From Macrostomum lignano (Eukaryota): a DNA stretch of 64,000 bases. The DNA is taken from contig NIVC01000586.1 in the NCBI GenBank assembly GCA_002269645.1, forward strand, positions 210,490 through 274,489. Direction: 5' to 3'. The stretch's first letter is position 1. Each line of letters starts with the position of its first letter. The notes below the pieces were generated by a model. It searched no databases. It was not told where the DNA came from and saw only the letters and a list, made by a program, of their open reading frames with translations. Shown piece by piece: positions 2,857 through 21,360 of the stretch. Made by a program: the position numbers and the translations under genes.

Positions 2857-4368
2857 ATTTATATAAAAATTTGTGTCAATGCTAGAGTAAGTTAGAGCTA
2901 GGAGATTTCAAACTCACTGCTAGCATAGCTTGTACATTCATATAGTAGTGTATTTTGTCTAGTATACTTGGCGCACAATTGAAAATATTTTTCAGTAACT
3001 TCTAGTGTATACATTATATGATCTTGACTATAGATGCACAAGTATATGTGCATATGTGTATTCCCTCTAGGAAAAATTTTATGAGGCAATGCTAAGTTAG
3101 TAGTTAGCAATTACTAACTTTGCAGCAGCAGCTAACCAACAAGTAGGAAGTTTTGGTTTCATGTCTAAGCTGCTAAATAATAACTATTAGTTAATAGTAA
3201 GGTTGTGCCACCAAAACATCTATGTGATAAGAATGTAGGCTCTCTCAAGGCAAGTAGGAAAATACTAAATATTAAGCAGCTTTTTGTGGCTTTGAATTAA
3301 AATGGCCTCCATTAAACACAAGAAACTTTTCTGTCCCTAATGGGAGCTCACAAGTCAATGTTTGCAAGTTTTTCTGATGTTTCTAAGGCAAAGAGTAAGA
3401 AAAGAAAGGTGTGAGAGAAGATTAGATTTGCTATGGAGTCGAATGGACTGAGCAATTCAGTGTTTGCTCATGGGAAATCAGGTTTCTACTTCTTAGGGCA
3501 TTGTATTCCAACTGTAGGCCAATACAATCTACTAGAAAATTAAATGTTTCTGGGTTCATTTAGAAGTATTGATTAAAGTCATTACTAGCATTATAATTTA
3601 TGTGATCTTTGAACTCTCTTGGCCAACAATTTTCAACCAGGATATCAGCTTATTGAAGCTTGTCAAATAGTGGAATCTCCATTCTTAGCTGCCTCTTGAG
3701 GATACTAAACTTTACCAGTTAAACTTGTTGTCCTTTTAGGCTTTAGCTGAACTGCTAAGGTCATGAAACTGCAAACTAGTGCAAACTTTTGACCATAGAC
3801 ATTGCTCAGAAACCCCTTATCCAACTAATATGCTTATGAAGCCAAAAGTTAGTGTAGTAGACTGATAAAAATTAGAATGCAACTACTAGACTCAAGAAAC
3901 CAAAGGATGCCTGCAAACTATATATAATTAAAATGTTTTGAGGCAAACTGATCCCTAATTTCTTCCTAGACAATGGCTATAAAATCTGATGGTTACACTA
4001 TTATAATGCTAGAACTATTTTGTTTCCCTGAAAAATATAATTTAACAAAGAATTAATAATGGTTATACTTTAAATTTGTTTTGGAATTTCCAAAAAGTAC
4101 TATATTACTCGTAATATTTTACCAATTACAAAAGAACAATTAACTTTTTATTGCTCCAAGCATGCATAAAGGATAATATATAAATACTCATTTCTTTGTT
4201 TAAAAAATATTTGAGCTCCAAAAATAAGAAAAGCACTACTACTACTTCCAGCACTACTGCTCTCATTTCATTCGGTCTCGCTTGGCAAGAGCAGCTGTCT
4301 AACCAGTCTGTGAAGCAGAAAAAAACAAAAGTCCAGCTAGCATATTTTCAATTGTACTTTATTACACA

Positions 4369-7300
4369 ATGGCCTGCGACCTGCTAATGCCATCATCGCA
4401 AGGCGGAGCCAACAATCCAGCCTTCTCGCCGCTGACCCTGTTCGAGTGCACCATCACCAACGCACAGATGCTCATCGACTCCATGGCCGACCGGGACCTG
4501 ATGCAGGCCCTGAAGATCGCCGGCGGCCTCCACACCCACATTGTCGGCGTCATCGAGCCGCGCTACGATCGCGTCTGTCAGCGTAGCGACGAGCACGAAG
4601 CCTGCTGCCAGGCGGCTGCCGCGGCTGCAACATCAGCAACGCTGACTCCTTCCAAGTCAGCTGGCGCCGCCAACTCGGCCAGTTTCGGAGCCAATGGCAG
4701 CGGCGCCGATTTGAAATCTGCCGTAGCTGCCGCCGCCGCCGCGGCCGGCCTGAAGTCCGAGTCTACCGGCTCTGTGGCAGCTGGCGGCGTCAAGTCCGAG
4801 CTGCTGGACCCTGACGCGTTCCCCGAGGAAGACGAAGAGGACTGTCTGATCCTGGAGGAGGACTGCTCCTTCCCCGCCGCTGCTGCCGCAATGTCGCCGT
4901 CGGCCTCCAGCTCCGCCAGCCGAAAGCGCCACCGCCCGTTGTCGCCCTCGTCAAGTCTGCAGATGCCGGGCGGAGCCAGCGCGGGTTTTCCTGGCAGCGC
5001 CCAGCAACTGGCCGAGTGCAAAAATGCGCTCAGGATGGCCTATAAAAATATTAAAGGCAACGGGCCGCACCTGTTTGACTTTGCGCTGTCGTGAGTTGCT
5101 CTGCAATTCTTGCATCCCTTGTAGAGGGATTCGGTGGGGTATGCGCGGGTGAGGGATTCAGTGGGGTATGAGCGGGTGAGGGATTCAGTGGGGTATGAGC
5201 GGGTGAGGGATTCAGTGGGGTATGAGCGGGTGAGGGATTCAGTGGGGTATGAGCGGGTGAGGGATTCAGTGGGGTATGAGCGTGTGAGGGATTCAGTGGG
5301 GTATGAGCGTGTGAGGGATTCAGTGGGGTATGAGCGGGTGAGGGATTCAGTGGGGTATGAGCGTGTGAGGGATTCGGTGGGGTATGAGCGTGTGAGGGAT
5401 TCAGTGGGGTATGAGCAGCACAGTGAGGGATTCAGTGGGGTATGAGCGGGTGAGGGATTCAGTGGGGTATGAGCGGGTGAGGGATTCAGTGGGGTATGAG
5501 CGTGTGAGGGATTCAGTGGGGTATGAGCGTGTGAGGGATTCAGTGGGGTATGAGCGTGTGAGGGATTCAGTGGGGTATGAGCGTGTGAGGGATTCAGTGG
5601 GGTATGAGCGTGTGAGGGATTCAGTGGGGTATGAGCGTGTGAGGGATTCAGTGGGGTATGAGCGGGTGAGGGATTCAGTGGGGTATGAGCGTGTGAGGGA
5701 TTCAGTGGGGTATGAGCGTGTGAGGGATTCAGTGGGGTATGAGCGTGTGAGGGATTCAGTGGGGTATGAGCGGGTGAGGGATTCAGTGGGGTTGGGTATG
5801 AGCGGGTGAAGGATTCAGTGGCGTATAAGCGTGTGAGGGATTCAGTGGGGTATGAGCGTGTGAGGGATTCAGTGGGGTATGAGCGTGTGAGGGATTCAGT
5901 GGGGTATGAGTGTGTGAGGGATTCAGTGGGGTATGAGCGTGTGAGGGATTCAGTGGGGTATGAGCGTGTGAGGGATTCAGTGGGGTATGAGCGGGTGAAG
6001 GATTCAGTGGCGTATAAGCGGGTGAGGGATTCAGTGGGGTATGAGCGGGTGAGGGATTCGGTGGGGTATGAGCGGGTGAGGAATTCGGTGGGGTATGAGC
6101 GGCACAGTGAGGGATCCATTGGGGTCTGAGCAGCACAATGAGGGATTCAGTGGGATATGAGCAGCACAGTGAAGGATTCAGTGGGATATGAGCAGCACAG
6201 TGAGGGATTCAGTGGGGTATGAGCAGCACAATGAGGGATTCAGTGGGGTATGAGCAACACAGTGAGGGATTCAGGGGTCTGAGCAGCACAGTGAGGGATT
6301 CAGTGGGGTATGAGCAGCACAGTGAGGAATTCAGTGGGGTATGAGCAGCACAGTGAGGGATTCAGTGGGGTATGAGCAGCACAGTGAGGGATTCAGTGGG
6401 GTATAAGCAGCACAGTGAGGGATTCAGTGGGGTATGAGCAGCACAGTGAGGGATTCAGTGGGGTATGAGCAGCACAGTGAGGGATTCAGTGGGGTGGTGA
6501 GGCAGTGCAAGAACCCAACCAATCGCATTACATTTCATTACAATTTCACCAACCAATCGCAACGCCGCCGCAGCTTCCACGACCCGTCCAATCAGAGAGT
6601 ATCCGAGCAGATTATCGCTACGGCCCGCCAGCAGCTGAGCCACCTGCGCCTGCCTAACGATGTCTGGTGGAGTGAGTTGGTTATTTAATAATTTAAACAA
6701 ATGCATAAGTGACTACTCGCAACCAGTTAAAGTAATAGCATTAGCAAATGTATTAAGTGAATATTGATGTCGGCCCTCTCCTTGCATTTGGTGACTTCGC
6801 ACCGTGATCCAGTTTGATTGCCAGCTACAATAAGAGTTTTCATATCTTACCTGAGTATGGCTAGTAGCTAGTTTGTTTCCCATGGGACGGCAGCGCAACT
6901 GTCCCGTCATTAATTGATTCCGCCTCTATGAATTCATAATTAACTAATTATCTATGCTCTTCTTAACTGTTAGCAGTACAGTATGCATTTCAGTTTGTTG
7001 ATTTTGCTTCCCACTACCTGAGGTGCAGGTTTTATTGGTTATTTAAACCGACTGCAGGGTCGCGTGCTGATTATTGATACAAGCTGTGCAATTAGTTGTA
7101 CTTTTATTGCTGATCAGCTGCGTGCTGCCGTTCAACTGAAACTTTGTTTAGGCCAAGCCGGCAACCTGTGTAAGCGAATCAAAATCGAGCTGAACAATAA
7201 CAAGCGGCGCAATCGGCAGTTTCGCTGCAGGCAGAAGGTTGTTCTCCAACTGATTATTCTATTGGCTACCTAGCTAGCGAATCCCTACCAGCTGCAATGC

Positions 7301-10300
7301 TGAGCAGCCAGCCTCCCACATCCCCTAATGAGCCAGCCTCCCACATCCTTAATGAGCCAGTCTACCTCACCCCCTAATGAGCAGCCATCCTCCCACATCC
7401 CTAATGAACCAGTCTCCCTCACCCCCTAATAAGCAGCCAGCCTACCATATCCCCTAATGAGCCAGCCTCCCACATCCCTTAATGAGCAGCCAGCCTCCAA
7501 CACCCCATAATGAGCAGCCAGCCTCCCACACTCCCTAATGATCCAGCCTCCCACATCCCTTAATGAGCAGCCAGCCTCCCACACTCCATAATGAGCCAGC
7601 CTCCCACACCCCCTAATGAGCAGCCAGCCTCCCACACCCCCTAATGAGCAGCCAGCCTCCCACACCCCCTAATGAGCAGTCAGCCTCCCACACCCCCTAA
7701 TGAGCAGCTAGCCTCCCACACTCCATAATGAGCCAGCCTCCCACACCCCCTAATGAGCAGCCAGCCTCCCACATCCCTAATGAGCAGCCATTGAGTCTTG
7801 TCTTCTTAGCTTAGTTTATTGTGGCAGTGATAACAATCGGGAAAAGTTCTCAATGCCCTTATGAAGTGAAGCGGATCAAACTGCGGTGAAGCGGTGAAGT
7901 CTCGGGCAGTTGCTTGCTCAGCTCCGACAGTCATACCGCAGAGCCAATCAAATGCGTTTTTTAGAATCGCTCAACAGCAGCGGCGTGTTCGGTCAGGCGA
8001 GGCACAATTACTTAGCCAAATTTCGAATGCTTAAAATTAAACGGAAAAGCAACGTAGGTTTATTTGAGACTGTGTTCTCACTGAGCTGCGTGTGTCTGCA
8101 AACTCTGTTAGGTCATGGTTATAACTAGGGGGACAGGCAAATAAACTGACTTGCTGTGCCAGCGCTGTTAACCTGTAACCAAGTGTTAACCCGTAAACAG
8201 AGAAAGGCATGCCACTCGCCTTGCAGACAATAAAGCTGCTCGAGCATTTTATGCCGAGGAGAAAAATCGCGTGCTCACTCGAGTCCGAATGCGCCGCGTT
8301 GCCGGGCAGAAGTCTGTAAGGAGTCGCATCTGCCTTCCCTTCCCATCTTGTTTTTCTGAGTTGCAGTTTTGTCGCTTCTAATAGTTGCTTAATCAGCTGT
8401 TGCCACGGGCGTCTGGAGTTCCCGCTGGACTGGACTGGGGCGAGCATGGGGGGGGTAGTCAAATTGGGTATATATTCAAAAGGTGTTCATGACGACGCTC
8501 AAAGATCCCAGTGTCCAGTCCAGATAAGCTCCAGTGGTCCCTGGCCCATTCACCCATTGTTCATCCTGTTAATCGTTGTTATACGCTTTTATAAAAATTC
8601 GTAGCGATTCGGTGGCAAAGAGTTGGCCCATATCGACTAGAGTGCAGCTAGGCAGTATCTATGCAATAATAGCACACTGGATTGGACCGCTTACTGACCT
8701 TATTGCAGAGCACTGCTTCCCCAGCGTGTACGATGAGTTAACCAAATATGACAAGCATAGGGAGCGAATGAAGCACAGAATGCGAGCTCGCAGGCTTATG
8801 AACAGCGTACGTATTATAAATAGCTATAACTATTTGGCAGTGCAAGCCTGCTTGTTTCATAAATCACTGCCTAATCACGCATCAAACGCAAGGTCCGCGG
8901 CTAACACTTCCCATGGTTTCTTAGCGCAATCTTAATCCTCTTTGGGGTTGGGGATTTCTTTTTAAACTGTTTCAGGCCTGTCCAGTGCTGCGTTTGCTGA
9001 TCTGCAGCACAGCATATTGGAGAAGCGGCACTATACTAAGCATTCTGTGCGGAAATTCCGCAGCAAACTCAAGGTAAACACTGCCCTGGTCCGGATTGGG
9101 TCTTTGATATTAGCTTTTGCTTCTGCAGTCCAGTGTGTTCACCGTGTGTTCCGTGTTTGTTCTGGGCTATTAAAAGAGCAAGCTTTAATAGCCAAGATCT
9201 GGTCTGACAGTCGAATCCCACTGTCAAGTCCCAATCCCATAGTCAGAAGTCCCAATCCCGCAGTCAGAAGTCCCAATCCCATAGTCAGAAGTCCCAATCC
9301 CACAGTCAAAAGTCCCAATCTCACAGTGGGAAGTCACAATCTCACAGTCAGAAGTCACAATCTCACAGTCGTAAGTCACAATCCCACAGTCAAAAGTGAC
9401 AATCCCACTGTCAGAAGTCTCAATCTCGCAGTCAGAAATCCCAATCCCGCACTCAGAAGTCCCAATCCCACAGTCAAAAGTCCCAATCTCACAGTGGGAA
9501 GTCACAATCTCACAGTCAGAAGTCACAATCCCACAGTCGTAAGTCACAATCCCACAGTCAAAAGTAACAATCCCACTGTCAGAAGTCTCAATCTCGCAGT
9601 CAGAAATCCCAATCCCGCACTCAGAAGTCCCAATCCCACAGTCAGAAGTCACAATCTCACAGTCGTAAGTCACAATCCCACAGTCAGAAGTCCCAATCTC
9701 ACAGTGGGAAGTCCCAATCCCACAGTCAGAAGTCCCAATCTCACAGTCAGAAGTCCTAATCCCGCAGTTAGAAGTCCCAATCCCACATTCAAATCCCAAG
9801 CCCATAGTCAGAAGTCACAATCACACAGTCAGAAGTCACAATCACACAGTAGGAAATCACAATCCCGCAGTCAGAAGTCCCAATCACACAGTCGGAAATC
9901 ACAATCCCGCAGTCAAAAGTCCTAGCCCTGCTAATTTCAAATTAATCTCTACTGACTAATCCCTATTAAATTTATTCTGATAAATTGATAGGTTGCATGC
10001 CTGTTGGAGGTGCATAGCAACCCGGTAACGATGGTAACAAATTTCACGCAGCATCAAAAGCAAGGCCCGGCCGCCCCAGTTTAGCCAGCTCCGTTAGAGA
10101 TTGAATCCAGTGTTTCAGGACCGCCCGGCAGTAACACCTGCGCCGTGCGCTGCATTGCAGGCTGCGCTGAGGAATTGTGGCTGCTATTGAAGAAAGCTGT
10201 GGCGCACAAGCGCGAAAGAGACGTCTTCTATCAGCGCAAGGGGCGCCTGAAAAATAAAGTAAAACCATGCAGTCTATGCTCATTTGCTTACTTTTTCCAC

Positions 10301-11114
10301 CGGGTTTTATCCTTTGTTGTGAATTAACCAATTGGGTCGGTAAGACGCATATAGGCTTTTAGGAAGTAAGTGCTAATCAGGGACTTTTCTGCTCTCATTT
10401 ATACGACTGACATGATGCCTCATCTTTAAAATTGATTGGGCTGCGTGATATTACACCTCGCTGCCTCCCGATTTCCATCTCCCATTTCCAACCTCCATCT
10501 CCCCCTCCCAGCCTCCCTCTCTACCCCCTCCCAGCCTCTCTCTCTACCCCCTCCCAACCTCCCTCTATCTCCCGCTCCCAACCTCCATCTCTACCCCCCT
10601 CCGAACCTCCCTCTCCATCTCCTCTTTTCAATCTACCTTCATCTCCCCCTCCCGACCTCCCTCTCCATCTCCCTCTCCCGACCTACCTCTCCGTGTCCCA
10701 CACGCCACATACAGCTCCTGTTTTCTGACCCATCAGAAACTGGCCAGACGGCAGAAGAGCTTCGAACTGCTAGCAACCAGTTTATCCACCGACAAGTTCG
10801 ACAAGTACCGCATCATTTTGTCCCGGGACTACACTTCGTCTGACGAGGAAGCCGATGTTGGCAGCGGCGGTGCCAGCGCGAGCGGCGATGACGGAGGAGG
10901 CGGCGGAGGCGTCCTTCGAGTCCGCGAGCTGCCCTGGGAATCTGCGGAGCTGCGCGAGATGAAGCAGCAGCTGGACTCGATCTATCTGGAGAATTGCGCA
11001 ACTCAGAAGCAGGCGCAGCAGTTGCGCAGCACAGTGCGCGACTCCGGCTGCGTCAGCGGCAGGACTCCACCTGCCAACTGCCCGTCCTGGGCGCTGTCTA
11101 ATGAGTACCGCTAA
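4369..11114 (+). CDS. Paralog 1 of an uncharacterised gene with a mutually exclusive exon cluster; 427-431 aa per isoform
   Basis: Exon 1 is 4369-5090 (donor GTGAGT, phase 2). Exon 2 is 6574-6671 (98 nt, CAG acceptor, GTGAGT donor, phase 1). One of six cassettes follows (7152-10258). The last exon is 10737-11114 (phase 0, KLARRQKSFELLATSL...SRDYTSSDEE...WESAELREMKQQLD...PSWAL). Flanking splice positions match paralog 2 and the joined frame is open. Confidence 0.85.
5120..6497. repeat. 27-bp minisatellite (GAGCGGGTGAGGGATTCAGTGGGGTAT) in intron 1 of paralog 1
   Basis: About 50 near-identical tandem units; explains the YERVRDSVG-type ORFs. Confidence 0.95.
6884..6906 (+). promoter_or_regulatory. 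Candidate splicing docking site for the paralog 1 cassette cluster
   Basis: GGGACGGCAGCGCAACTGTCCCG lies 212 nt after the exon-2 donor, a similar distance to the paralog 2 dock. It is complementary to 7122-7133 (12 bp) and 7903-7913 (11 bp with a bulge); other matches are short. Confidence 0.4.
7152..7237 (+). CDS. Paralog 1 cassette exon 1 (86 nt): (S)QAGNLCKRIKIELNNNKRRNRQFRCRQK
   Basis: TTTAG acceptor, weak GTTGTT donor, phase 1 to 0, open frame, basic. Confidence 0.6.
7305..7790. repeat. Minisatellite, about 25-30 bp (TAATGAGCAGCCAGCCTCCCACACCCCC)
   Basis: Tandem degenerate units between cassettes 1 and 2. Confidence 0.9.
7965..8053 (+). CDS. Paralog 1 cassette exon 2 (89 nt): (K)SLNSSGVFGQARHNYLAKFRMLKIKRKSN
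   Basis: TTTTTAG acceptor, GTAGGT donor, phase 1 to 0. Confidence 0.75.
8227..8315 (+). CDS. Paralog 1 cassette exon 3 (89 nt): (N)NKAARAFYAEEKNRVLTRVRMRRVAGQKS
   Basis: TTGCAG acceptor, GTAAGG donor, phase 1 to 0. Confidence 0.75.
8709..8806 (+). CDS. Paralog 1 cassette exon 4 (98 nt): (K)HCFPSVYDELTKYDKHRERMKHRMRARRLMNS
   Basis: TTGCAG acceptor, GTACGT donor, phase 1 to 0. Confidence 0.75.
8976..9073 (+). CDS. Paralog 1 cassette exon 5 (98 nt): (S)LSSAAFADLQHSILEKRHYTKHSVRKFRSKLK
   Basis: TTTCAG acceptor, GTAAAC donor, phase 1 to 0. Confidence 0.75.
9215..9925. repeat. 21-bp minisatellite (AGTCCCAATCCCACAGTCAGA)
   Basis: About 33 tandem units between cassettes 5 and 6; explains the SPNPTVR ORF. 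Confidence 0.92.
10161..10258 (+). CDS. Paralog 1 cassette exon 6 (98 nt): (S)CAEELWLLLKKAVAHKRERDVFYQRKGRLKNK
   Basis: TTGCAG acceptor, GTAAAA donor, phase 1 to 0. Confidence 0.75.
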
Positions 11115-11259
11115 TGCTTGCCAGACTGATTAGGTGGCGAGCTGGTTGATTCGCGAACTATAGGGTTACTCGCGCCGTTTACCCAACTAACTGACGAATT
11201 TAGGGCCAACCATTCTTTACTGCAATTGTTTCTGACACCCAGTTTTGTTCGTGTTCTCT

Positions 11260-11532
11260 TCCATCCATGGGATACCCGCCACACCTGGTCTCTCCCATCC
11301 ATGGGATACCGCCACACCTGGTCTCCCCCATCCATGGGATACCGCCACACCTGGTTTCCCCCAGCCATGGGGTACCCGGCACACCTGGTCTCTCCCATCC
11401 ATGGGGTACCCGCCACACCTGGTTTCCCCCAGCCATGGGGTACCCGGCACACCTGGTCTCTCCCATCCATGGGGTACCCGGCACACCTGGTCTCTCACAT
11501 CCATGGGGAACCCGGCACACCTGGTCTCTCAC
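11260..11532. repeat. About 33-bp minisatellite (CACACCTGGTCTCTCCCATCCATGGGGTACCCG)
   Basis: About 8 tandem units downstream of the paralog 1 stop. Confidence 0.9.
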
Positions 11533-12119
11533 ATCGAGTTCGTCATGCTGTCAATGTTGACTTTTCGAATCAAAATTTGAATAGCTCTCCAATGCTGGCA
11601 CAGAGGCTCCATGCGATTTCAATACCTGGGGAAAAGTATTTGCTGCATTTAAGCTTCAATATTTGCACTGCGAGTAGTTGCGCAATGCGTCTCTTATCTA
11701 TAATATTTTACTTGTTGCTGCTATCCCAGTCAGTAAATATTATTGCAATTAGCGAACTTTCATAAACCCCACATTGTCACATGTCTCTGTTCACTTGTTA
11801 ATCTGTAATAAGTTTGCCTGTATTCTGTTTTCATGTGTTTATTATTTTTTGCTGTTGTTTAACTGCCCCCAGTCATTTCCGCAGCTTTGCTTTTGCGTTA
11901 ACACACTGTCTCGTTCTGTACATGCTATAAAATACGATAATTACATAACAATATGATAATAATTAATTTATTTGCTAAAGAATTTTTCATTCTTTTTCAG
12001 TTGTTGCCGATTAATTATCGGAAAATGCAGTTGTATTACTGTTCTGAAGCTTTGCTCATGTAGTGAAATAGACCAGGCTTTATTATTATAGCATAGTGTA
12101 ATTCATAGTGCATGTTTAG

Positions 12120-12788
12120 TTCCTGGGATTCCCCTCCAGCACCCATCCCCCTGACTGCCTACCCCACAGCGTACATTGAATGTCTGGGATTCCCCTCCAG
12201 CACCCACCCCTCACTGCCTACCCCACTGCGTACATTGAGGGCCTGAGATTCCCCTCCAGCACCCACCCCTCACTGCCTACTCCACTGCGTACATTGAGTG
12301 TCTGAGATCCCCCTCAAGCACCCACCCCTCACTGCCTACCCCACTGCGTACATTGAATGTCTGGAATTCCTCTCCAGCACCCACCCCTCACTGCCTACCC
12401 CACTGCGTACATTTAATGTCTGGAATTCCTCTCCAGCACCCACCCCTCACTGCCTACCCCACTGCGTACATTGAATGTCTGGAATTCCTCTCCAGCACCC
12501 ACCCCTCACTGCCTACCCCACTGCGTACATTAAATGTCTGGAATTCCTCTCCAGCACCCACCCCTCACTGCCTACCCCACTGCGTACATTGAATGTCTGG
12601 AATTCCTCTCCAGCACCCACCCCTCACTGCCTACCCCACTGCGTACATTGAATGTCTGGAATTCCTCTCCAGCACCCACCCCTCACTGCCTACCCCACTG
12701 CGTACATTAAATGTCTGGAATTCCTCTCCAGCACCCACCCCTCACTGCCTAACCCACTGCGTACATTAAATGTCTGGGATTCCCTTCT
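12120..12788. repeat. 59-bp tandem repeat
   Basis: About 11 units of CTGGAATTCCTCTCCAGCACCCACCCCTCACTGCCTACCCCACTGCGTACATTGAATGT just upstream of paralog 2. Confidence 0.95.
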
Positions 12789-12846
12789 AGCGCAATGAGT
12801 CAAGTCTGCAATTACGCTTTTGCATGTAGCCTTTCACCACCAAACA

Positions 12847-15800
12847 ATGACGGACATTCTGCCTAGCCACTCCATCACCGGGGGCGTTTTTTCACCCCTG
12901 ACCCTGTTCGAGTCCACCATCACCAACGCGCAGATGCTGGTGGAGTCCATGGCCGAGCGGGAGCTGTTCTCCGCCCTGCGCATCATCGGCGGCCTGCACA
13001 GCCACGTTGTCCAGGTCATGGAGCCGCGCTACGGCCGCCTGTGTGAGCGCAGCGACCACCTCGCCGAGCTGGAGGCTGCCGGCCTGGATCAAAGCCACGG
13101 CTCCGCTGCCGAGGCTGCCGAAGCCACTTCATCCTCGTCGGCTGCTGCCGCTTCTAGCAGACGCTTCGCTAAGGAGGAGAAACTGCTAGGCGACACCGAC
13201 ACGGAGCAGCAGTGCACCTCCGTGCTGCGCTCCGCCCTTGGCACCATCAAGGTATTTCCTATTCACCGCGTTGTGATGTCGGCGCCTTTCCTATTATATT
13301 TGATGTCGCGGACTTTCCCATCTCCTCTGATGTCGCCGACTTTCCCATCTCCTCTGATGTCGCCGACTTTCCCATCTCTGATGTCGCCGCCTTTCCCATC
13401 TTTTTTTATGTCGCCGCCTTTCCCCACTCCTTTGATGTCGCCGCCTTTCCCCACTCCTTTGATGTCGCCGCCTTTCCCGTCTCTTTGATGTCGCCGTCAT
13501 TCTCTTCTCTTCTCTTCTGGTGCTCAACAGATGGAGAACTTTGACGCGGCCGGCGCTTCCGCCCTGCCATCCGCCGCTAACGCAAACTTCGGCGAACAGC
13601 TGGAGCCGCCGGAGATCTTGGAAGAGGACGCCGATGATGAAGACGAGGATGACGATTGCGTCATCACCGACTACTTCGACGACAGCAGCTTTGGCGCTAG
13701 CGGCATCGGCGCCTTCGGTGGCGTCGGCCCGTCGCCCGCCAAAATGCCGCGACTCGGCGGGGTCGGCGGCGGCGCAGGCGACAGCTCGATGCCGGCCGAG
13801 TGCAAGACCATCATGCGCCGGGCTTACAAAGCTCTCAAGGGCAACGGGCCGCATCTGTTTGACTTCAGCCTGCCGTGAGTCTCCTTAGCTGGCACGCCGG
13901 TTACCAGTCCCGGCCTCAGTCTGGAAACGCCTCTAGAAATCTTCGACTTTACATCAGCCAAAATGCAAACCCTGGTTAGGCTACCCTGAACAAACCCTGA
14001 GCCACCCCTGAACAAACCCTGAGCCACCCCTGAACTCAAGTCTGAGCCATTCCCTGAACTCAACCCTGAGCCACCCCTTGAACTCAACCCTGAGCCACCC
14101 CCTGAACTTAACCCTGAGCCACCCCCTGAGCTCAATCCTGAGCCACCCCCTGAACTCAACTCTGAGCCACCCCCTGAACTCAACTCTGAGCCACCCCCTG
14201 AACTCAACTCTGAGCCACCCCCTGAACTCAAATCTGAGCCACCCCCTGAACTCAACTCTGAGCCACCCCCTGATCTCAACCCTGAGCCAGCCCCTGAACT
14301 CAACCCTGAGCCACCCTTGAACTCAACCCTGAGCCAGCCCTGATCTCTGTGGACTCAAGAGCGCCGCCTCCCCCACCGCCGGCCCCACAGCTTCTCTTCG
14401 GAGCACAACCAGCGAGTTGCCACCCGCGTCACCGCCAAAGCCAAGGAGATGGCCCAGGGCAAGGGCTGGCCCGAGGACATTTGGCTGAGTGAGAAACAGT
14501 GCCGCTTTTTGTGCATTTAGATATAAAGTTTGATAAGTTGATAAATGATGTGTAGAATACAACTCTTAATTAAGATTACACTGCGTATGAAGTAGTTAAT
14601 AGAATAGATTAATCGTAAAATCTTATCTTAGTTATATTCTATTAATACTACTCGCACAGACTAGCCAAGTAGTATCTATAGGCTGCGCTAATTTGCTAAT
14701 TTTACCTGCCCTCAAGTCTGGAAACGTCGCAAGTAATTTGGGTACAAGAAATATTTAATAACTAATTTTAATCTCCTTTCAACTTGGGCTGCTTCTAATA
14801 GGTTCATGTCTGACTATTTGAGACACAATCAGAGACTTAATTATGCATTAATTATCTAATTAATTATTTGCATTATTTCTATTGCCGAACTGCCTACAGT
14901 TAGCAGGTGGTAAAGCGATGTAATGCTACTGAGACTGTTGCCTATTCGACGTTTCTTATTGGCCATTTAGAATGAGTTTTGAATAAAGCTGAACTGCTCA
15001 ACTCACACTTAGAACTGCCCTACGGCTCAAGGCTAGTCTACCTGTACCTGGATTTTCGGCAAAAGATGAGGTTTAAGCATCGATGCGTTGTAAGCTTTGC
15101 TGGTCATCTCTGTTTCTATCGGTTTTTTGTGTCACACCAGCCTCCACTGTCCTGCTTGCGATGTTCGCCCAGACTCGCGTCTTTATAACAGGCTTTGCTC
15201 AAAACAGTTTTGCCAATATGTTTCTGGCCTCCAATTTGCCCAGGGCTGCCCAAAGAGTCCAGAGTAAATCGGATTCACTGCACCTATGGAGCCCGTCTGC
15301 GCGCCAAGCACAGGCAGATTGTGAGTTCCCTCCCCCTGTGCCCTCCCCTGTACCTTGATGAGCCGCCTCTCCCCCTGTGCCTTTGATGAGCCGCCTCTCC
15401 CCTTGTGCCTTTGATAAGCCGCCTCCCTCCCCCTGTGCCTTTGATAAGCCGCCTCCCTCCCCCTGAGCCTTTGATGAGCCGCCTCTCCCCATGTGCCTTT
15501 GATCAGCCGCCTCTGCCCCTGTGCCTTTGATGAGCGGCCTCCCTTCCCCTGAGCCTTTGATAAGCCGCCTCTCCCCTGAGCCTTTGATGAGCCGCCTCTC
15601 CCCTTGTGCCTTTGATAAGCCGCCTCCCTCCCCTGAGCCTTTGATAAGCCGCCTCTCCCCTTGTGCCTTTGATAAGCCGCCTCCCTCCCCCTGAGCCTTT
15701 GATGAGCCGCCTCTCCCCCATGTGCCTTTGATCAGCCGCCTCTGCCCCTGTGCCTTTGATGAGCGGCCTCCCTTCCCCTGAGCCTTTGATAAGCCGCCTC

Positions 15801-18800
15801 TCCCCTGAGCCTTTGATGAGCCGCCTCTCCCCTTGTGCCTTTGATAAGCCGCCTCCCTCCCCCTGTGCCTTTGATAAGCCGCCTCCCTCCCCCTGAGCCT
15901 TTGATGAGCCGCCTCTCCCCACGTGCCTTTGATCAGCCGCCTCTGCCCCTGTGCCTTTGATGAGCGGCCTCCCTTCCCCTGAGCCTTTGATAAGCCGCCT
16001 CTCCCCTGAGCCTTTGATGAACCGCCTCTCCCCTTGTGCCTTTGATAAGCCGCCTCCCTCCCCTGTGCCTTTGATAAGCCGCCTCCCTCCCCCTGAGCCT
16101 TTGATGAGCCGCCTCTCCCCCATGTGCCTTTGATCAGCCGCCTCTGCCCCTGTGCCTTTGATGAGCGGCCTCCCTTCCCCTGAGCCTTTGATAAGCCGCC
16201 TCTCCCCTGAGCCTTTGATGAGCCGCCTCTCCCCTTGTGCCTTTGATAAGCCGCCTCCCTCCCCCTGTGCCTTTGATAAGCCGCCTCTCCCCTTGTGCCT
16301 TTGATAAGCCGCCTCCCTCCCCCTGAGCCTTTGATAAGCCGCCTCTCCCCTTGTGCCTTTGATGAGCCGCCTCTCCCCTTGTGCCTTTGATAAGCCGCCT
16401 CCCTCCCCTGAGCCTTTGATAAGCCGCCTCTCCCCTTGTGCCTTTGATCAGCCGCCTCTCCCCCTGTGCCTTTGATAAGCCGCCTCCCTCCCCCCTGAGC
16501 CTTTGATGTCCGCCTGTCTTTGCGCTGGGTTAAGCAAGTCAGTGATAAATAAGTCTACAATTTTACAATCAATTCGACGTTTCCCGTCTGGACAGTTGGC
16601 TAAAAACTCTCGCCTATAAGTGCACCCAGAGTCTGAGGCGATTTTCCCGCAGGACTGCCGAAAGTCGGCCGCCTGTCCGAGATTTTCTTTGTTTTCAGAA
16701 GTCAAATCCGAAACAAGCTGCGACTCGTTGTACGCAATTGTCACAGTTCCGCACTTTCTCTGTTGTGTTGGGAATTTTTCTGTCAAAAATTTTCTACGAT
16801 GCATATCGGCGTTTCCTGACTAAAGTTGAGCAGATTTGGCTTTGCGTAGCAAATTTCTACCAAAGTCGCTATCGTCTACTCACGCCAGTCAGTAGTGTAT
16901 TGAGGAGTGCTCGGCTCACTTTTTACATCTATTTTTAGATCTGCCTTCCAGCGGCAAAATCAGGAAGATGTTCACCGATTTTAGGCAGAAGATGCGCGCT
17001 AGGCTGGTGCTTGGCGTGCGTGCCCGATTTTCTCTGTTTAGGTTTTTATTTAATTTTTTGACGTTTCCCGGCTGCCTGTAAGCTCACTGCTGTGTGAGGC
17101 TTGTGCTTGCTAACACTTGACCTGACTGCCCCGCTGTTGCAGGGCTGCCACACACCGGCCGGCCGACCGCCATATTCAACGATTTTAGAAAGAAAATGCG
17201 CACCAGGTTTCGAATGGATGTTAGTGATAATTGCTTTAGGTGTTTCTATGGGGCTCTGCGAATTCCGCTTCAGTGCTGAGACGTTTCCCGACAATGGCCG
17301 GGTGCTGCAATTGTGCGAACCCCCCTGTGTCCGTCACGCCACCGACTGCCGCTTGCAGATCTGCCGCCCAAGGCCCGCCTGCTCGCCATTTTTGGCGACT
17401 TTAAAAAGAAAAGGCGATTCAAGTCCCGCTCTGATGTCAGTGCAGCTGGGTGGCTTTTCGCCTCATCTGTGTTGTCTGTTTTCCCCCATTTTTGCTTGCA
17501 CTGCCTTGGCTGGGTAGGCAGGGTAGCTAGATTGGTAGACAGACAAATTGATTGATTGACAGACAGGCAGGCAGGCAAACAAACACTAAGATAGGCAAAC
17601 AGACAGACACAGATACGCTAGCAGACCAACGCAATTGCGCGGTGCACCGTGGGGGGGGGGTGAGGCTGTACATTGCTGGCACTGTTGGGCCAGCCGCCCT
17701 TACTCGCTGTAACTTATCGCTCAGCCTGTTACAATGCCAGACGCAATGCCAGACGTTTCCTGACAACTCAGACTGTGAATTGTACAGCACACAGAATTGC
17801 CAGCAAACAGTTCCCCATCGCGCGCGTTGCAGAGCTGCCCATGAACAGCCGATTGATCTGCATATTCGCCGACTTTAGAAAGAAGATGCGCAACAGATTT
17901 CGTTCAGATGTTGGTCCGGGTTCAAAACTCGATTTCAGAGCTTTCAGGCTGCGATATGAAAATATTTGTTACATGCTATTGGAACTACTGTACTGACTGC
18001 TGATCAGTAGTCAATGCCATCATGATGTGAAAAATGTTTTCCTCTCTGATTTGCTTCTGTTTAAACTGTACTGAGCTGTCGAAAAGCCACTGCATGACCT
18101 GAGCTATGACTGAAAAGCCACTGCATGACCTGATCTATGACTGAAAAGCCACTGCATGACCTGATCTATGACTGAAAAGCCACTGCATGACCTGATCTAT
18201 GACTGAAAAGCCACTGCATGAGATCTGAGCTATGACTGAAAAGCCACTGCATGAGATCTGAGCTATGACTGAAAAGCCACCACTCTATGACCTGAGCTAT
18301 GACTGAAAAGCCACCACTCTATGACCTGAGCTATGACTGAAAAGCCACCACTCTATGACATGAGCTGTGACTGAAAAGCCACCACTCTATGACCTGAGCT
18401 ATGACTGAAAAGCCACTGTATGAAGGCTATGACTGAAATGAATCTCAAAGCAGCCAGCTCTCGCAGTCTTGCCTCGCTTCCCCCGAACTTGCAGAAGCTG
18501 AACCGCCGTCAGAAAAGTTTCGAACTCGTGGCCACCAGCCTGACCTCTGACGAGCTGGAGAAGTTCCGCGTGATCCTCACCAGGGAGTACACCAGCTCGG
18601 ATGAGGAGTGCGGCTCCGGCGGCGCCGACCAGCTGCGGGTCCGCGAGCTGTCCTGGGAGTCCGACGAGGTGAAGCGGCTGAAGCGGCAGCTGGACCAGGT
18701 GTACGCGGACAACTGCGCCACCACCAAGCAGAAGCAGCAGCTGGCCAGGTGCATCCGCGACCCCGTCCGATCGCGGTCGCAGCGGCCGCCGCCCGAGGCT

Positions 18801-18884
18801 GCGCCAAGCTGGGCTTTGAAGGCGCCGCTGCAGAAGAACCGGCCGGGAGACGGCGCTCCGCCGCCCGCCTCCGGCACCGCCTGA
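12847..18884 (+). CDS. Paralog 2 of an uncharacterised gene with a mutually exclusive exon cluster; 437 aa per isoform
   Basis: Exons are 12847-13251, 13531-13874 (donor GTGAGT, phase 2), 14391-14488 (98 nt, phase 1), one of seven 77-nt cassettes, and 18495-18884 (KLNRRQKSFELVATSL...TREYTSSDEE...WESDEVKRLKRQLD...PSWAL). The total is 1314 nt with an open frame. The N-terminus FSPLTLFESTITNAQML is shared with paralog 1. Confidence 0.88.
13985..14340. repeat. 24-bp minisatellite (CCCTGAACTCAACTCTGAGCCACC)
   Basis: About 14 tandem units in an intron of paralog 2. Confidence 0.92.
14715..14733 (+). promoter_or_regulatory. Putative docking site (AGTCTGGAAACGTCGCAAG) for the paralog 2 cassette cluster
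   Basis: Reverse-complementary to a motif found upstream of all seven cassettes. It lies about 227 nt after the donor of the 98-nt exon. Confidence 0.8.
14947..14955 (+). promoter_or_regulatory. Selector A (CGACGTTTC)
   Basis: 9/9 complementary to dock positions 14721-14729; about 58 nt before cassette A. Confidence 0.65.
15013..15089 (+). CDS. Paralog 2 cassette A (77 nt): (K)LPYGSRLVYLYLDFRQKMRFKHRCV
   Basis: CTTAG acceptor, GTAAGC donor, phase 1 to 0, homologous to B-G. Confidence 0.88.
15155..15175 (+). promoter_or_regulatory. Selector B (CTTGCGATGTTCGCCCAGACT)
   Basis: Pairs with the whole dock: 11 bp (one G-U) plus 7 bp around a 1x3 internal loop; about 69 nt before cassette B. Confidence 0.7.
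15244..15320 (+). CDS. Paralog 2 cassette B (77 nt): (R)LPKESRVNRIHCTYGARLRAKHRQI
   Basis: CCCAG acceptor, GTGAGT donor, phase 1 to 0. Confidence 0.85.
15330..16505. repeat. About 23-26-bp minisatellite (GTGCCTTTGATAAGCCGCCTCCCTCCCCCT)
   Basis: About 45 units with higher-order blocks, lying between cassettes B and C. Confidence 0.95.
16575..16588 (+). promoter_or_regulatory. Selector C (CGACGTTTCCCGTC)
   Basis: 10 contiguous bp with the dock; about 65 nt before cassette C. Confidence 0.7.
16653..16729 (+). CDS. Paralog 2 cassette C (77 nt): (R)LPKVGRLSEIFFVFRSQIRNKLRLV
   Basis: CGCAG acceptor, GTACGC donor, phase 1 to 0. Confidence 0.85.
16807..16821 (+). promoter_or_regulatory. Selector D (CGGCGTTTCCTGACT)
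   Basis: 14/15 positions pair with the dock (one G-U); about 118 nt before cassette D. Confidence 0.7.
16939..17015 (+). CDS. Paralog 2 cassette D (77 nt): (N)LPSSGKIRKMFTDFRQKMRARLVLG
   Basis: TTTTAG acceptor, GTGCGT donor, phase 1 to 0. Confidence 0.88.
17060..17073 (+). promoter_or_regulatory. Selector E (GACGTTTCCCGGCT)
   Basis: 13/14 positions pair with the dock (one G-U); about 70 nt before cassette E. Confidence 0.7.
17143..17219 (+). CDS. Paralog 2 cassette E (77 nt): (R)LPHTGRPTAIFNDFRKKMRTRFRMD
   Basis: TTGCAG acceptor, GTTAGT donor, phase 1 to 0. Confidence 0.88.
17280..17292 (+). promoter_or_regulatory. Selector F (GACGTTTCCCGAC)
   Basis: 12/13 positions pair with the dock; about 67 nt before cassette F. 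Confidence 0.72.
17359..17435 (+). CDS. Paralog 2 cassette F (77 nt): (N)LPPKARLLAIFGDFKKKRRFKSRSD
   Basis: TTGCAG acceptor, GTCAGT donor, phase 1 to 0. Confidence 0.88.
17752..17764 (+). promoter_or_regulatory. Selector G (GACGTTTCCTGAC)
   Basis: 12/13 positions pair with the dock; about 69 nt before cassette G. Confidence 0.72.
17833..17909 (+). CDS. Paralog 2 cassette G (77 nt): (K)LPMNSRLICIFADFRKKMRNRFRSD
   Basis: TTGCAG acceptor, GTTGGT donor, phase 1 to 0. Confidence 0.88.
18085..18435. repeat. 28-31-bp minisatellite (GACCTGAGCTATGACTGAAAAGCCACTGCAT)
   Basis: About 12 units in the intron before the last exon of paralog 2. Confidence 0.92.
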
Positions 18885-19789
18885 CCGCCTTCGCGAGTTA
18901 CTCCTGCTTGACCTGACTTCATCTGCCCTTCTCCGTTATCCGCTCCCATACGCCCTTACCCTCCGTTATTCGCCCGTCCATTCGCCCTTACCCTCCGTTA
19001 TCCGCCCCCTCATCCGCCCTTACCCTCCGTTATTCGCCCCTCCAGCCGCCCTTATTTTCCGTTATCCGCCACCTCATCCGCCCTTTCTCTACGTTATCCG
19101 CCCCCACCCGCCCTTACCCTCCGTTATCCGCCCCCTCATCCGCCCTTACCCTCCGTTATTCGCCCCCTCATCCGCCCTTACCCTCCGTTATTCGCCCCTC
19201 CAGCCGCCCTTTCTCTTTATCCGCCCCCTTTCTTGCCCTTGCTCTCACAGTCCCTGTTATCCGCCCCGCCTCCGCTCAGTCGCAGTTCGCAAGCGCGGAC
19301 CAGTATTCGAACCCGGGGCAACGAGTTATTGAACTGTTATTAAAAGCCGCTCTGTGCCCTCCTGTTTGCGCGTCTGCAATCCCCTGTGCCGCTGTTCAAT
19401 GTACATTGACTTGTGTTTTATTGAATATTTTCTGTTCGTGGCAGACTTTGCATTTTTATTTTTGTAAACTATTTGAGTATCAATATATTTGCTTTGTCAA
19501 TCACCCATCAATTAGCATGGACTGTTTTATTTTTCATTAATATACACCCGCGTTTAATCACAATGTCCAGGCTCTGTTGAACTGCAATTGAATGTCTTTA
19601 ACCAGGCAAATACAGAACCGCCAACGCATTAACAACTGCTTATTCAATTATCAATTGCTGTTGCGAAATGATCGAATTCTTATCGATAAATATCTTGATA
19701 AGCTGGCTGCTTTATTTTGAAAATAGATTTTTGCAATTGCATTATCAAAAATATCAGTTTAGTTTGTGGACCCTGAAATAATTGGGAAT

Positions 19790-21360
19790 CACCAAAGTGA
19801 GATCTGCAATCGTGGTGGATCCTCTAAGTGAGACCTGCAATCATGGGGGGGATCCTCACAGTGAGATCTGAAATCACGGGGGATCCTCACAGTGAGATCT
19901 GCAACCATGGGGGATCCCTAATGTGAGAGCTGCAACCATGAGGGGATCCTCACAGTGAGATCTGCATCCATGAGGGGATCCTCACAGTGAGATCTGCAAC
20001 CATGAGGGGATCCTCACAGTGAGATCTGCAATCATGGGGGATCGAAGTGAGATCTGCAATCATGGGGGATCGAAGTGAGATCTGCAATCATGGGGGATCC
20101 CCAAAGTGAGATCTGCATCCATGAGGGGATCCTCACAGTGAGATCTGCAATCATGGGGGATCCCCAAAGTGAGATCTGCATCCATGAGGGGATCCTCACA
20201 GTGAGATCTGCAATCATGGGGGATCGAAGTGAGATCTGCAATCATGGGGGATCGAAGTGAGATCTGCAATCATGGGGGATCCCCAAAGTGAGATCTGCAT
20301 CCATGAGGGGATCCTCACAGTGAGATCTGCAATCATGGGGGATCCCCAAAGTGAGATCTGCAATCATGGGGGATCCTCACAGTGAGATCTGCAATCATGG
20401 GGGATCCTCACAGTGAGATCTGCAATCATGGGGGATCCTCACAGTGAGATCTGCAATCATGGGGGATCCTCACAGTGAGATCTGCAATCATGAGGGATCC
20501 TCACAGTGAGATCTGCAATCATGGGGGATCCTCACAGTGAGATCTGCAATCACGGGGGGATCCCCAAAGTGAGATCTGCAACCATGGGGGGATCCTCACA
20601 GTGAGATCTGCAATCACGGGGGGATCCTCATAGTGAGATCTGCAATCACGGGGGATCCTCGAAGTGAGATCTGCAATCACGGGGGATCCTCGAAGTGAGA
20701 TCTGCAATCATGGGGGGATTCTTTAAGTAAGATCTGCAATCATGGGGGGATCCTCACAGTAAGATCTGCAACCATGGGGGGATCCTCACAGTGAGATCTG
20801 CAATCACGGGGGGATCCTCATAGTGAGATCTGCAATCACGGGGGATCCTCGAAGTGAGATCTGCAATCACGGGGGATCCTCACAGTGAGATCTGCAACCA
20901 TGGGGGGATCCTCACAGTGAGATCTGCAATCATGGGGGATCCCCAAAGTGAGATCTGCATCCATGGGGGGATCCTCACAGTGAGATCTGCAATCATGGGG
21001 GATCCTCACAGTGAGATCTGCAACCATGGGGGGATCCTCACAGTGAGATCTGCAATCACGGGGGATCCTCGAAGTGAGATCTGCAATCATGGGGGATCCT
21101 CACAGTAAGATCTGCAACCATGGGGGGATCCTCACAGTGAGATCTGCATCCATGGGGGGATCCTCACAGTGAGATCTGCAATCATGGGGGATCCTCACAG
21201 TGAGATCTGCAATCACGGGGGGATCCTCATAGTGAGATCTGCAATCACGGCGGATCCTCACAGTGAGATCTGCAATCACGGCGGATCCTCACAGTGAGAT
21301 CTGCAATCACGGGGGATCCCCAGAGTAAAATCTACAATCATGGGGGATCCCAAAGTGAGA
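19790..21360. repeat. About 30-bp minisatellite (GTGAGATCTGCAATCATGGGGGATCCTCACA)
   Basis: About 50 tandem variant units. Confidence 0.95.

What the first reader, a model, noticed from the sequence alone, without database searches (positions are those of the whole stretch)
14715..17764. Dscam1-style docking site and seven selector sequences controlling the cluster
Seen: one intronic 19-mer (AGTCTGGAAACGTCGCAAG, 14715-14733) is reverse-complementary to a motif upstream of every cassette, at 14947, 15155, 16575, 16807, 17060, 17280 and 17752. Six of the seven end 58-70 nt before their acceptor (D is 118 nt). Pairing is 9-18 bp, and several substitutions are G-U compatible. All selectors target the same dock nucleotides, so only one can pair at a time. 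Established: competing dock-selector RNA duplexes enforce exclusivity in the Dscam1 exon 6 cluster. Inference: an independent origin of that mechanism in this lineage.
Basis: partly seen in the sequence, partly recalled or inferred. Interest (0 to 1): 0.95.

Follow-up and report, generated by a model that had tools for sequence, protein, structure and literature searches.

The report
Flatworm docking-site/selector RNA switch for exon choice
A flatworm (Macrostomum lignano) gene of unknown function holds seven interchangeable 77-base exons, each preceded by a short intron sequence complementary to one shared upstream "docking" sequence; this is the arrangement that lets insect Dscam1 pick one exon at a time, found here in an unrelated gene and phylum.

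Summary
The window is Macrostomum lignano contig NIVC01000586.1. On the + strand lies an unannotated cluster of seven homologous 77-nt cassettes. Only inclusion of exactly one cassette keeps the reading frame.

The dock (14715-14734) lies in the intron before the cluster. All seven cassettes have a complementary selector, 55-70 nt upstream of the acceptor in six cases and 117 nt in cassette D.

- An unbiased scan of that intron recovers the dock as the clear top partner of all cassette-upstream regions.
- In two paralogous genes (66-75% protein identity) the 17-mer CTGGAAACGTCGCAAGT is the only non-coding 11-mer run shared by all three genes. Their 77-nt cassettes (13 and 5) mostly carry selectors at the same offset.
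- A more distant subfamily has 107-nt cassettes and a different dock (GGRCGTTGCAGGGC). Its selectors (CCTGCAACG) match that dock, giving compensatory changes at four or more base pairs.
- RNA-seq-derived gene models of four paralogs each contain exactly one cassette.

I conclude this is a Dscam1-exon-6-type competing-RNA-structure system that arose independently. I found no prior report. Function is inferred, not tested. Selector A is weak, some paralog cassettes lack selectors, and how downstream cassettes are skipped is unknown.

The parts
12832..13254 (+). First coding exon of the gene (MTDILPSH...)
   Evidence: tblastn of P0003, 99% identity
13519..13874 (+). Second coding exon; donor GTGAGT follows at 13875
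14391..14488 (+). Constitutive exon just before the cluster (98 nt); donor TGA|gtgaga
14715..14734 (+). Docking site AGTCTGGAAACGTCGCAAGT, 227 nt downstream of the donor. The 17 nt CTGGAAACGTCGCAAGT are identical in three paralogous genes.
14945..14957 (+). Selector A (TTCGACGTTTCTT); the weakest, about 10 bp, -15.9 kcal/mol
15013..15089 (+). Cassette A, 77 nt (LPYGSRLVYLYLDFRQKMRFKHRCV)
15155..15175 (+). Selector B (CTTGCGATGTTCGCCCAGACT); two helices with an internal loop, -30.5 kcal/mol. Its GCTTGCGATGTT is conserved upstream of the orthologous L001 cassette.
15244..15320 (+). Cassette B, 77 nt
16574..16593 (+). Selector C (TCGACGTTTCCCGTCTGGAC), -19.2 kcal/mol
16653..16729 (+). Cassette C, 77 nt
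16806..16821 (+). Selector D (TCGGCGTTTCCTGACT), 117 nt before the acceptor, -22.4 kcal/mol
16939..17015 (+). Cassette D, 77 nt
17058..17073 (+). Selector E (TTGACGTTTCCCGGCT), -20.4 kcal/mol
17143..17219 (+). Cassette E, 77 nt
17278..17292 (+). Selector F (GAGACGTTTCCCGAC), -23.0 kcal/mol
17359..17435 (+). Cassette F, 77 nt
17750..17764 (+). Selector G (CAGACGTTTCCTGAC), -21.3 kcal/mol
17833..17909 (+). Cassette G, 77 nt
18495..18884 (+). Last coding exon (KLNRRQKSFELVATSL...), stop codon at 18882-18884

Best explanation
In the pre-mRNA, the intronic docking site (14715-14734) can pair with only one of seven selector sequences at a time. Each selector lies about 55-120 nt upstream of one 77-nt cassette. 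The duplex loops out all cassettes between the constitutive exon (14391-14488) and the chosen one. It brings that cassette's 3' splice site next to the upstream donor, so that cassette is spliced in.

Because 77 is not a multiple of 3, transcripts with no cassette, two or three cassettes carry a premature stop and are presumably discarded. This acts as a backstop.

Shown: the sequence anatomy, the statistics, conservation, covariation, the frame logic, and single-cassette transcripts in paralogs. Inferred: that the duplex forms in vivo, that it activates the adjacent acceptor, and that some further factor keeps downstream cassettes silent.
For: 1. All seven cassettes have a dock-complementary element at a stereotyped distance.

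2. A de novo scan of every 20-mer of the first intron against all cassette-upstream regions puts the dock first: median -21.3, next best -14.7, background -9.2 with sd 3.3.

3. The motif is absent elsewhere in the 64 kb.

4. Across three paralogous genes, the only non-coding 11-mers shared by all three form the dock 17-mer. Pairwise shared intronic 10-mers are essentially the dock and selectors at matching offsets.

5. Paralog clusters carry selectors 48-86 nt upstream of their acceptors: 10 of 13 cassettes in L001 (one of them, cassette 13851, only 12 nt upstream and called weak) and 4 of 5 in L002.

6. Selector similarity to the dock complement is confined to the roughly 18 columns that face the dock and falls to background outside them. 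In the core, G-U-compatible transitions outnumber A-C-mismatch transitions 14 to 2; in the flanks the ratio is 53 to 33.

7. The distant subfamily (L004, L005) has its own dock, GGRCGTTGCAGGGC, and matching selectors CCTGCAACG 42-83 nt upstream of 107-nt cassettes.

8. Cognate docks pair better than non-cognate ones. No non-cognate pairing reaches 11 of 14 core matches (0 of 83), against 13 of 25 for cognate beta pairings.

9. Compensatory pairs occur at alignment columns 8:49 and 9:48 (A-U to G-C), 14:43 (C-G to U-A) and 18:39 (A-U to G-C). Covariation score is 0.311 against 0.214 +/- 0.014 in shuffles (0 of 500 reach it). Slid registers give 0.07-0.18.

10. Only exactly one cassette gives the full ORF.

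11. The NCBI gene models come from RNA-seq-guided transcript assembly (PMC5730564). P0002, P0007, P0009 and P0010 each contain exactly one cassette, skipping others upstream and, for P0002 and P0010, also downstream.
Against: - Selector A is not significant on its own.
- L001 cassettes 16702, 17902 and 18147 and L002 cassette 13004 show no convincing selector, and L001 cassette 13851 has only a weak one 12 nt upstream.
- No transcript of the window gene's own isoforms was available. Its annotated model stops in the intron after the constitutive exon.
- Selector rows for the covariation count were picked by complementarity to their own dock, which leans towards pairing.
- The beta/gamma covariation reflects essentially one divergence event, not many.
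- Dock-selector pairing does not by itself explain why downstream cassettes are skipped. No second dock or conserved element in the last intron was found.
- No experiment was done.
Confidence: 0.8

Rival explanations
1. The shared motif upstream of each cassette is a binding site for a splicing regulator protein, copied along with each exon duplication. The upstream 'dock' is unrelated, or binds something else.
For: The selectors share a core, (G)ACGTTTCC. Tandem duplication would copy any intronic enhancer together with the exon (model in PMC6071210).
Against: - A single-strand RNA-binding protein would not recognise both a motif and its reverse complement.
- Selectors resemble each other only where they face the dock, and they extend into different halves of it: L002 selectors run 5' into AACTTGTGACG, window selectors run 3' into CCCGAC(T).
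- Substitutions are biased towards G-U-compatible ones.
- The dock is more conserved than any selector.
- The gamma subfamily changed dock and selectors together.
Confidence: 0.07
2. The complementarity is a neutral relic. An ancestral intronic hairpin arm was duplicated with the exons, and the pairing has no present role. Exclusivity comes only from frame-shift and decay of wrong isoforms.
For: The 77-nt length makes zero, two or three cassettes out of frame or stop-containing. Orthologous cassettes carry orthologous selectors, consistent with inheritance by duplication.
Against: - Introns of the three paralogs are otherwise unalignable, yet the 17-nt dock is identical and selectors persist at the same offset. 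That requires purifying selection.
- Cognate specificity and compensatory change between subfamilies.
- Decay alone would waste most transcripts of a 7-13 cassette cluster.
Confidence: 0.06
3. The elements act at the DNA level, for example as transcription-factor sites or recombination signals, rather than in RNA.
For: None specific. Orientation-reversed copies of a motif can occur for DNA-binding sites.
Against: - Strand-asymmetric G-U-compatible substitutions.
- The fixed position relative to 3' splice sites.
- The one-dock, many-selectors geometry.
- No promoter or trans-splice logic fits internal 77-nt coding cassettes.
Confidence: 0.02

Closest known systems
Drosophila Dscam1 exon 6 cluster docking site / selector sequences (Graveley 2005, as summarised in PMC6071210 and PMC11802352)
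   Same: - One conserved docking site lies in the intron just downstream of the constitutive exon.
- One selector lies upstream of each variable exon.
- Selectors overlap on the dock, so only one duplex can form.
- The dock is more conserved than the selectors.
- The variable exons are tandem duplicates of equal length.
   Different: - The gene is unrelated (no Ig/FN3 domains, no Pfam domain at all) and the phylum is Platyhelminthes.
- There are 7 cassettes here (5-13 in paralogs), not 48.
- Cassette length is 77 nt (2 mod 3), so wrong numbers of cassettes are out of frame.
- The dock sequence is unrelated to the Dscam1 dock.
- No hrp36-like repressor, locus control region or balancer structures were identified.
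Insect 14-3-3zeta, Mhc and MRP1 clusters (Yang et al. 2011; Yue et al. 2017, cited in PMC6071210)
   Same: Competing intronic RNA pairings choose one exon from a small tandem cluster. These show that the mechanism recurs in unrelated genes.
   Different: In those genes the docking site lies downstream of the cluster (PMC6071210). Here it lies upstream, as in Dscam1 exon 6. All those cases are arthropod.
Duplication model for the origin of competing structures (Ivanov and Pervouchine 2018, PMC6071210)
   Same: Selectors appear to have been copied together with their exons. Orthologous cassettes in different paralogs carry recognisably orthologous selector variants, e.g. GCTTGCGATGTT before the B-type cassette in the window and L001.
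   Different: That is a model of origin, not a system. Here a whole paralog family lets the later co-evolution of dock and selectors be seen.
Human ATE1 exons 7a/7b competing structures (PMC7797038)
   Same: Intronic elements compete for one partner to give mutually exclusive splicing outside arthropods.
   Different: ATE1 has only two exons and a more complex five-element arrangement. It is not a one-dock, many-selector array.

Membership tests
Docking-site/selector competing RNA structure system (Dscam1 exon 6 type) | A tandem cluster of homologous alternative exons of which exactly one is used | tested here: met
   There are seven 77-nt cassettes with AG/GT boundaries and homologous peptides. 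Only single inclusion gives the full ORF. RNA-seq-derived models of four paralogs each carry exactly one cassette. Transcripts of the window gene itself were not available.
Docking-site/selector competing RNA structure system (Dscam1 exon 6 type) | A single conserved docking site in the intron flanking the cluster | tested here: met
   14715-14734. The 17-mer is identical in three paralogs and is the only non-coding 11-mer run shared by all three. It is recovered de novo as the top partner.
Docking-site/selector competing RNA structure system (Dscam1 exon 6 type) | A selector complementary to the dock next to each variable exon | tested here: met
   7 of 7 in the window (A weak). In L001, 10 of 13 by duplex energy, of which 8 also reach 10 of 14 core matches. 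In L002, 4 of 5 by energy and 3 of 5 by core match. In the gamma clusters, 7 of 11. Offsets cluster at 42-93 nt from the acceptor.
Docking-site/selector competing RNA structure system (Dscam1 exon 6 type) | Selectors overlap on the same dock nucleotides, so pairings are mutually exclusive | tested here: met
   Six of the seven window selectors pair with the GGAAACG core. Selector B pairs on both sides of it.
Docking-site/selector competing RNA structure system (Dscam1 exon 6 type) | Evolutionary support for pairing (covariation) | tested here: met
   Beta and gamma subfamilies differ on both sides at four or more pairs. Covariation score is 0.311 against 0.214 +/- 0.014 in shuffles (0 of 500 reach it). 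Slid registers give 0.07-0.18. There is cognate specificity. Caveats: rows were selected by complementarity, and the changes reflect one divergence event.
Docking-site/selector competing RNA structure system (Dscam1 exon 6 type) | Disrupting and restoring the pairing changes exon choice | not testable with these tools
   Needs minigenes or transgenics.
Docking-site/selector competing RNA structure system (Dscam1 exon 6 type) | A repressor or other device that silences non-selected (downstream) exons | not testable with these tools
   No conserved second element was found in the last intron or downstream of the cassettes. Several cassette donors are non-consensus: gtacgc, gtgcgt, gttagt, gtcagt, gttggt.
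Dscam / Dscam1 gene family (homology) | An Ig/FN3 cell-adhesion protein | tested here: not met
   No Pfam domain in the window protein or in six paralogs. The family is an uncharacterised one, expanded in Macrostomum. The resemblance is therefore one of mechanism, not descent.

The most novel reading that the evidence does not exclude
This is a multi-exon docking-site/selector splicing switch that arose independently in Platyhelminthes. It is present across a whole expanded gene family, in which different paralog subfamilies carry different, co-evolved dock/selector 'codes':

- beta: CTGGAAACGTCGCAAGT
- gamma: GGRCGTTGCAGGGC
- probably alpha: CTTGCATTTGGTGAC

It would be the first such array that I could find reported outside arthropods. 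It sits in a species where transgenesis exists, so dock, selector and compensatory mutants could be made in vivo.
Probability: 0.6. Interest if true: 0.78.

Novelty: new member of a known kind. Interest (0 to 1): 0.7.

Why it matters
One-dock, many-selector arrays have been documented in arthropod genes. Outside arthropods, competing RNA structures are known mainly for two-exon cases such as ATE1.

An independent flatworm example would show that the solution is a general outcome of tandem exon duplication, as the Ivanov-Pervouchine model predicts. Here it spans 7-13 cassettes and a family of paralogs whose docks and selectors have drifted together.

The paralog series is a natural compensatory-mutation experiment. 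M. lignano is transgenic-tractable (PMC5730564), so the model is directly testable.

It also flags that these clusters are unannotated or mis-annotated in the current M. lignano gene set.

Tried and rejected
- **Loose k-mer scan.** A G-U-permissive scan for elements complementary to many introns was swamped by G/U-rich low-complexity hits. I replaced it with duplex-energy and Watson-Crick scans.
- **Second dock.** I looked for a second dock or conserved element in the last intron or downstream of the cassettes (bidirectional model). Nothing was conserved.
- **L001 cassettes without selectors.** I looked for an alternative dock for cassettes 16702, 17902 and 18147. Nothing convincing.
- **L007 (P0015 gene).** It has three or more cassettes but no clear dock.
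- **Protein family.** Pfam found nothing on the window protein or six paralogs. A profile search shows a large unnamed family, mostly M. lignano, with one mussel hit. The protein's function therefore remains unknown.
- **Rfam.** No family matched in 4000-20000, so the dock is not part of a known intronic RNA.
- **Literature.** No report of Macrostomum or flatworm dock/selector splicing was found. Yue et al. 2017 (MRP across phyla) could not be read, so I cannot exclude that it proposes pairings in a non-arthropod.
- **UniRef models.** P0004, P0005 and P0006 contain two cassettes or read through introns. I treated them as gene-prediction artefacts, not as evidence of double inclusion.
Full report
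**What the window is.** Window 12000-19500 is 100% identical to contig NIVC01000586.1 of the Macrostomum lignano assembly GCA_002269645.1. All close protein relatives are from M. lignano.

The gene is on the + strand. Its exons are 12832-13254, 13519-13874 and 14391-14488, then a cluster of alternative exons, then a last exon 18495-18884. The deposited model (P0003, BOX15_Mlig032950g2) runs through the donor at 14488 into the intron and stops there. The cluster is therefore unannotated.

**The cassettes.** Seven segments of exactly 77 nt are flanked by AG and GT:
- A 15013-15089
- B 15244-15320
- C 16653-16729
- D 16939-17015
- E 17143-17219
- F 17359-17435
- G 17833-17909

They encode homologous peptides of the form LPxxxR....F..F+.K.R.+.+. 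Any single cassette gives an uninterrupted frame into the last exon. No cassette, any pair, or any of the 35 triples gives a premature stop.

**The observation.** The 19-mer is at 14715-14733. The distance to the acceptor is about 55-70 nt for six of them and 117 nt for D.

GACGTTTC occurs five times on the + strand of the 64 kb, and all five are in the cluster.

RNAduplex energies are -15.9, -30.5, -19.2, -22.4, -20.4, -23.0 and -21.3 kcal/mol for A-G. Control 130-nt windows gave -12.6 +/- 3.2, with a minimum of -20.6 (n = 463). A alone is not significant.

Best Watson-Crick matches to the central 14 nt of the dock complement are 10, 10, 11, 10, 11, 11 and 9. In random 160-nt windows, 10 or more occurs in 3.5% and 11 or more in 0 of 2000.

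I also scanned every 20-mer of the first intron against all seven cassette-upstream regions without prior assumptions. The dock came out as the clear maximum: median -21.3, runner-up -14.7, background -9.2 with sd 3.3.

**Paralogs (names alpha, beta, gamma are mine).** The gene belongs to a family greatly expanded in M. lignano: 492 library hits at E <= 1e-3, with names where given almost all M. lignano and one mussel protein. It has no Pfam domain.

Two beta paralogs with 66-75% protein identity were fetched: L001 (the P0001/P0012 gene) and L002 (the P0002 gene). They have 13 and 5 cassettes of 77 nt at the same position.

Their first introns contain the same 17-mer, CTGGAAACGTCGCAAGT, inside unrelated flanks. 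Across the three whole genes, the only non-coding 11-mers shared by all three are this 17-mer. Only one coding stretch is longer.

Pairwise, the shared intronic 10-mers are the dock and selector cores at matching offsets. Examples are GCTTGCGATGTT before the B-type cassette of the window and L001, and GCGACGTTTTCA before the A-type cassette of L001 and L002.

By duplex energy, 10 of 13 L001 cassettes and 4 of 5 L002 cassettes have selectors of -19 to -27 kcal/mol. All lie 48-86 nt upstream of the acceptor except that of L001 cassette 13851, which lies 12 nt upstream and which I count as weak.

**Signature of pairing rather than a shared motif.** I aligned 17 selectors to the dock complement. 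Identity is high only in the roughly 18 columns that face the dock and drops to background outside them. Different selectors extend into different halves of the dock.

Within the core, G-U-compatible transitions number 14 and A-C-mismatch transitions 2. In the flanks the counts are 53 and 33.

**A second code.** The more distant gamma genes are L004 (P0009) and L005 (P0010), with 34-39% identity. They have clusters of five and six or more cassettes, 107 nt long in L004 and mostly 107 nt in L005.

The same unbiased scan finds a different dock in their first introns:
- L005 7520, TGAAAGGACGTTGCAGGGCT: median -21.1, next best -13.8.
- L004 7458, AGGGCGTTGCAGGGCCTGAT: in a GC-rich background.

Selectors with the core CCTGCAACG lie 42-83 nt upstream of 7 of 11 cassettes.

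Anchored on the shared CGT, dock and selectors differ on both sides at alignment columns 8:49 and 9:48 (A-U becomes G-C), 14:43 (C-G becomes U-A) and 18:39 (A-U becomes G-C).

On the 26-row alignment:
- 71.9% of cells pair, against 65.5 +/- 1.1 in shuffles.
- 61 cells change on both sides, against 33 +/- 4.6.
- The covariation score is 0.311, against 0.214 +/- 0.014.
- No shuffle of 500 reaches any of these three values.
- Slid registers give 34-41% paired and scores of 0.07-0.18.

Beta docks pair with beta clusters at -18 to -23 kcal/mol, but with gamma or alpha clusters at only -10 to -17. No non-cognate combination reaches 11 of 14 core matches (0 of 83), against 13 of 25 cognate beta combinations.

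Two caveats apply. Selector rows were chosen by complementarity to their own dock. The beta/gamma difference is one historical divergence, not many independent events.

**Transcript evidence.** The NCBI BOX15_Mlig models come from a genome-guided RNA-seq assembly plus TransDecoder (PMC5730564). P0002, P0007, P0009 and P0010 each contain exactly one cassette joined to the flanking constitutive exons. P0002 uses the third of five and P0010 the fourth of six or more, so cassettes both upstream and downstream are skipped. P0009 uses the last of five, skipping the four upstream. I had no transcript data for the window gene itself.

**Mechanism.** The anatomy is that of the Dscam1 exon 6 cluster as described in PMC11802352 and PMC6071210: a dock downstream of the constitutive exon and a selector upstream of each variant.

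The most likely working is as follows. One selector at a time pairs with the dock. This loops out the intervening cassettes and places the adjacent acceptor next to the donor at 14488. The 77-nt length makes wrong cassette numbers non-productive.

What silences the cassettes downstream of the chosen one is unknown. I found no second conserved element. Several cassette donors are non-consensus, which may contribute.

**Comparison and novelty.** The mechanism is a known kind. The gene is not a Dscam, and the dock sequence and phylum are new, so the origin is independent.

Literature searches for Macrostomum or flatworm docking-site/selector splicing found nothing. One potentially relevant paper (Yue et al. 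2017) could not be read.

I rate this a new member of a known kind. It has the added interest of a family-wide, co-evolving set of dock codes in a transgenic-tractable animal.

Noticed in passing
window 4369-11111 (+): A tandem paralog (alpha type, P0007-like, 42-63% identity) lies just upstream of the focal gene. It appears to have its own cluster.

- Candidate cassettes: 7152-7237 (86 nt), 7965-8053 and 8227-8315 (89 nt), 8709-8806, 8976-9073 and 10161-10258 (98 nt). All lengths are 2 mod 3.
- CTTGCATTTGGTGAC at 6781-6795 lies about 100 nt after the constitutive exon's donor. It is identical to the same position in the P0007 gene (L003 7590).
- Good selectors: GCATCAAACGCAAGG at about 8879 and GCATCAAAAGCAAGG at about 10051.
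- The other cassettes are unclear.

The same alpha-then-beta gene pair recurs in L001, L002 and L003.
   Followed up: partly
window 13913-13930 (+): A partial copy of the dock, CCTCAGTCTGGAAACG, sits in the intron before exon 14391-14488. It shares 12 nt of the dock's 5' half plus 5 nt of window-specific flank. It is not present in the paralogs L001 or L002. It could be a decoy or second dock for the selectors that use the 5' half (D-G), or a neutral local duplication.
   Followed up: partly
window 12123-12783, 13274-13496, 13984-14347, 15343-16515, 18081-18438, 18919-19245: The sequence upstream of the first coding exon, nearly every intron and the 3' UTR of this gene each hold their own tandem-repeat array, with periods of 59, 27, 24, about 29 (higher order 201/430), 34 and 32 nt. 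The 1.3-kb intron between cassettes B and C is almost entirely such an array.
   Followed up: partly
L001 16702, 17902, 18147 (cassettes) and their upstream 200 nt: The last three cassettes of the L001 cluster are relatives of window cassette C. They have no dock-complementary selector. Instead they share a sense-strand (T)GCAAG-containing stretch about 55-65 nt upstream. How they are chosen is unexplained.
   Followed up: partly
window 14848-14863 and L002 12507-12522: A 16-nt AT-rich run, TTAATTATCTAATTAA, is shared by the first introns of the window gene and L002, downstream of the dock in both. It may be chance in AT-rich sequence.
   Followed up: no
window 12832-14517 and 4369-7273: Both family genes in the window are annotated as truncated products. 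P0003 ends in the intron after 14488. The upstream gene's 313-aa model ends near its first cassette. UniRef models P0004, P0005 and P0006 string two cassettes together or read through introns. The clusters confuse both transcript assemblers and gene predictors.
   Followed up: partly
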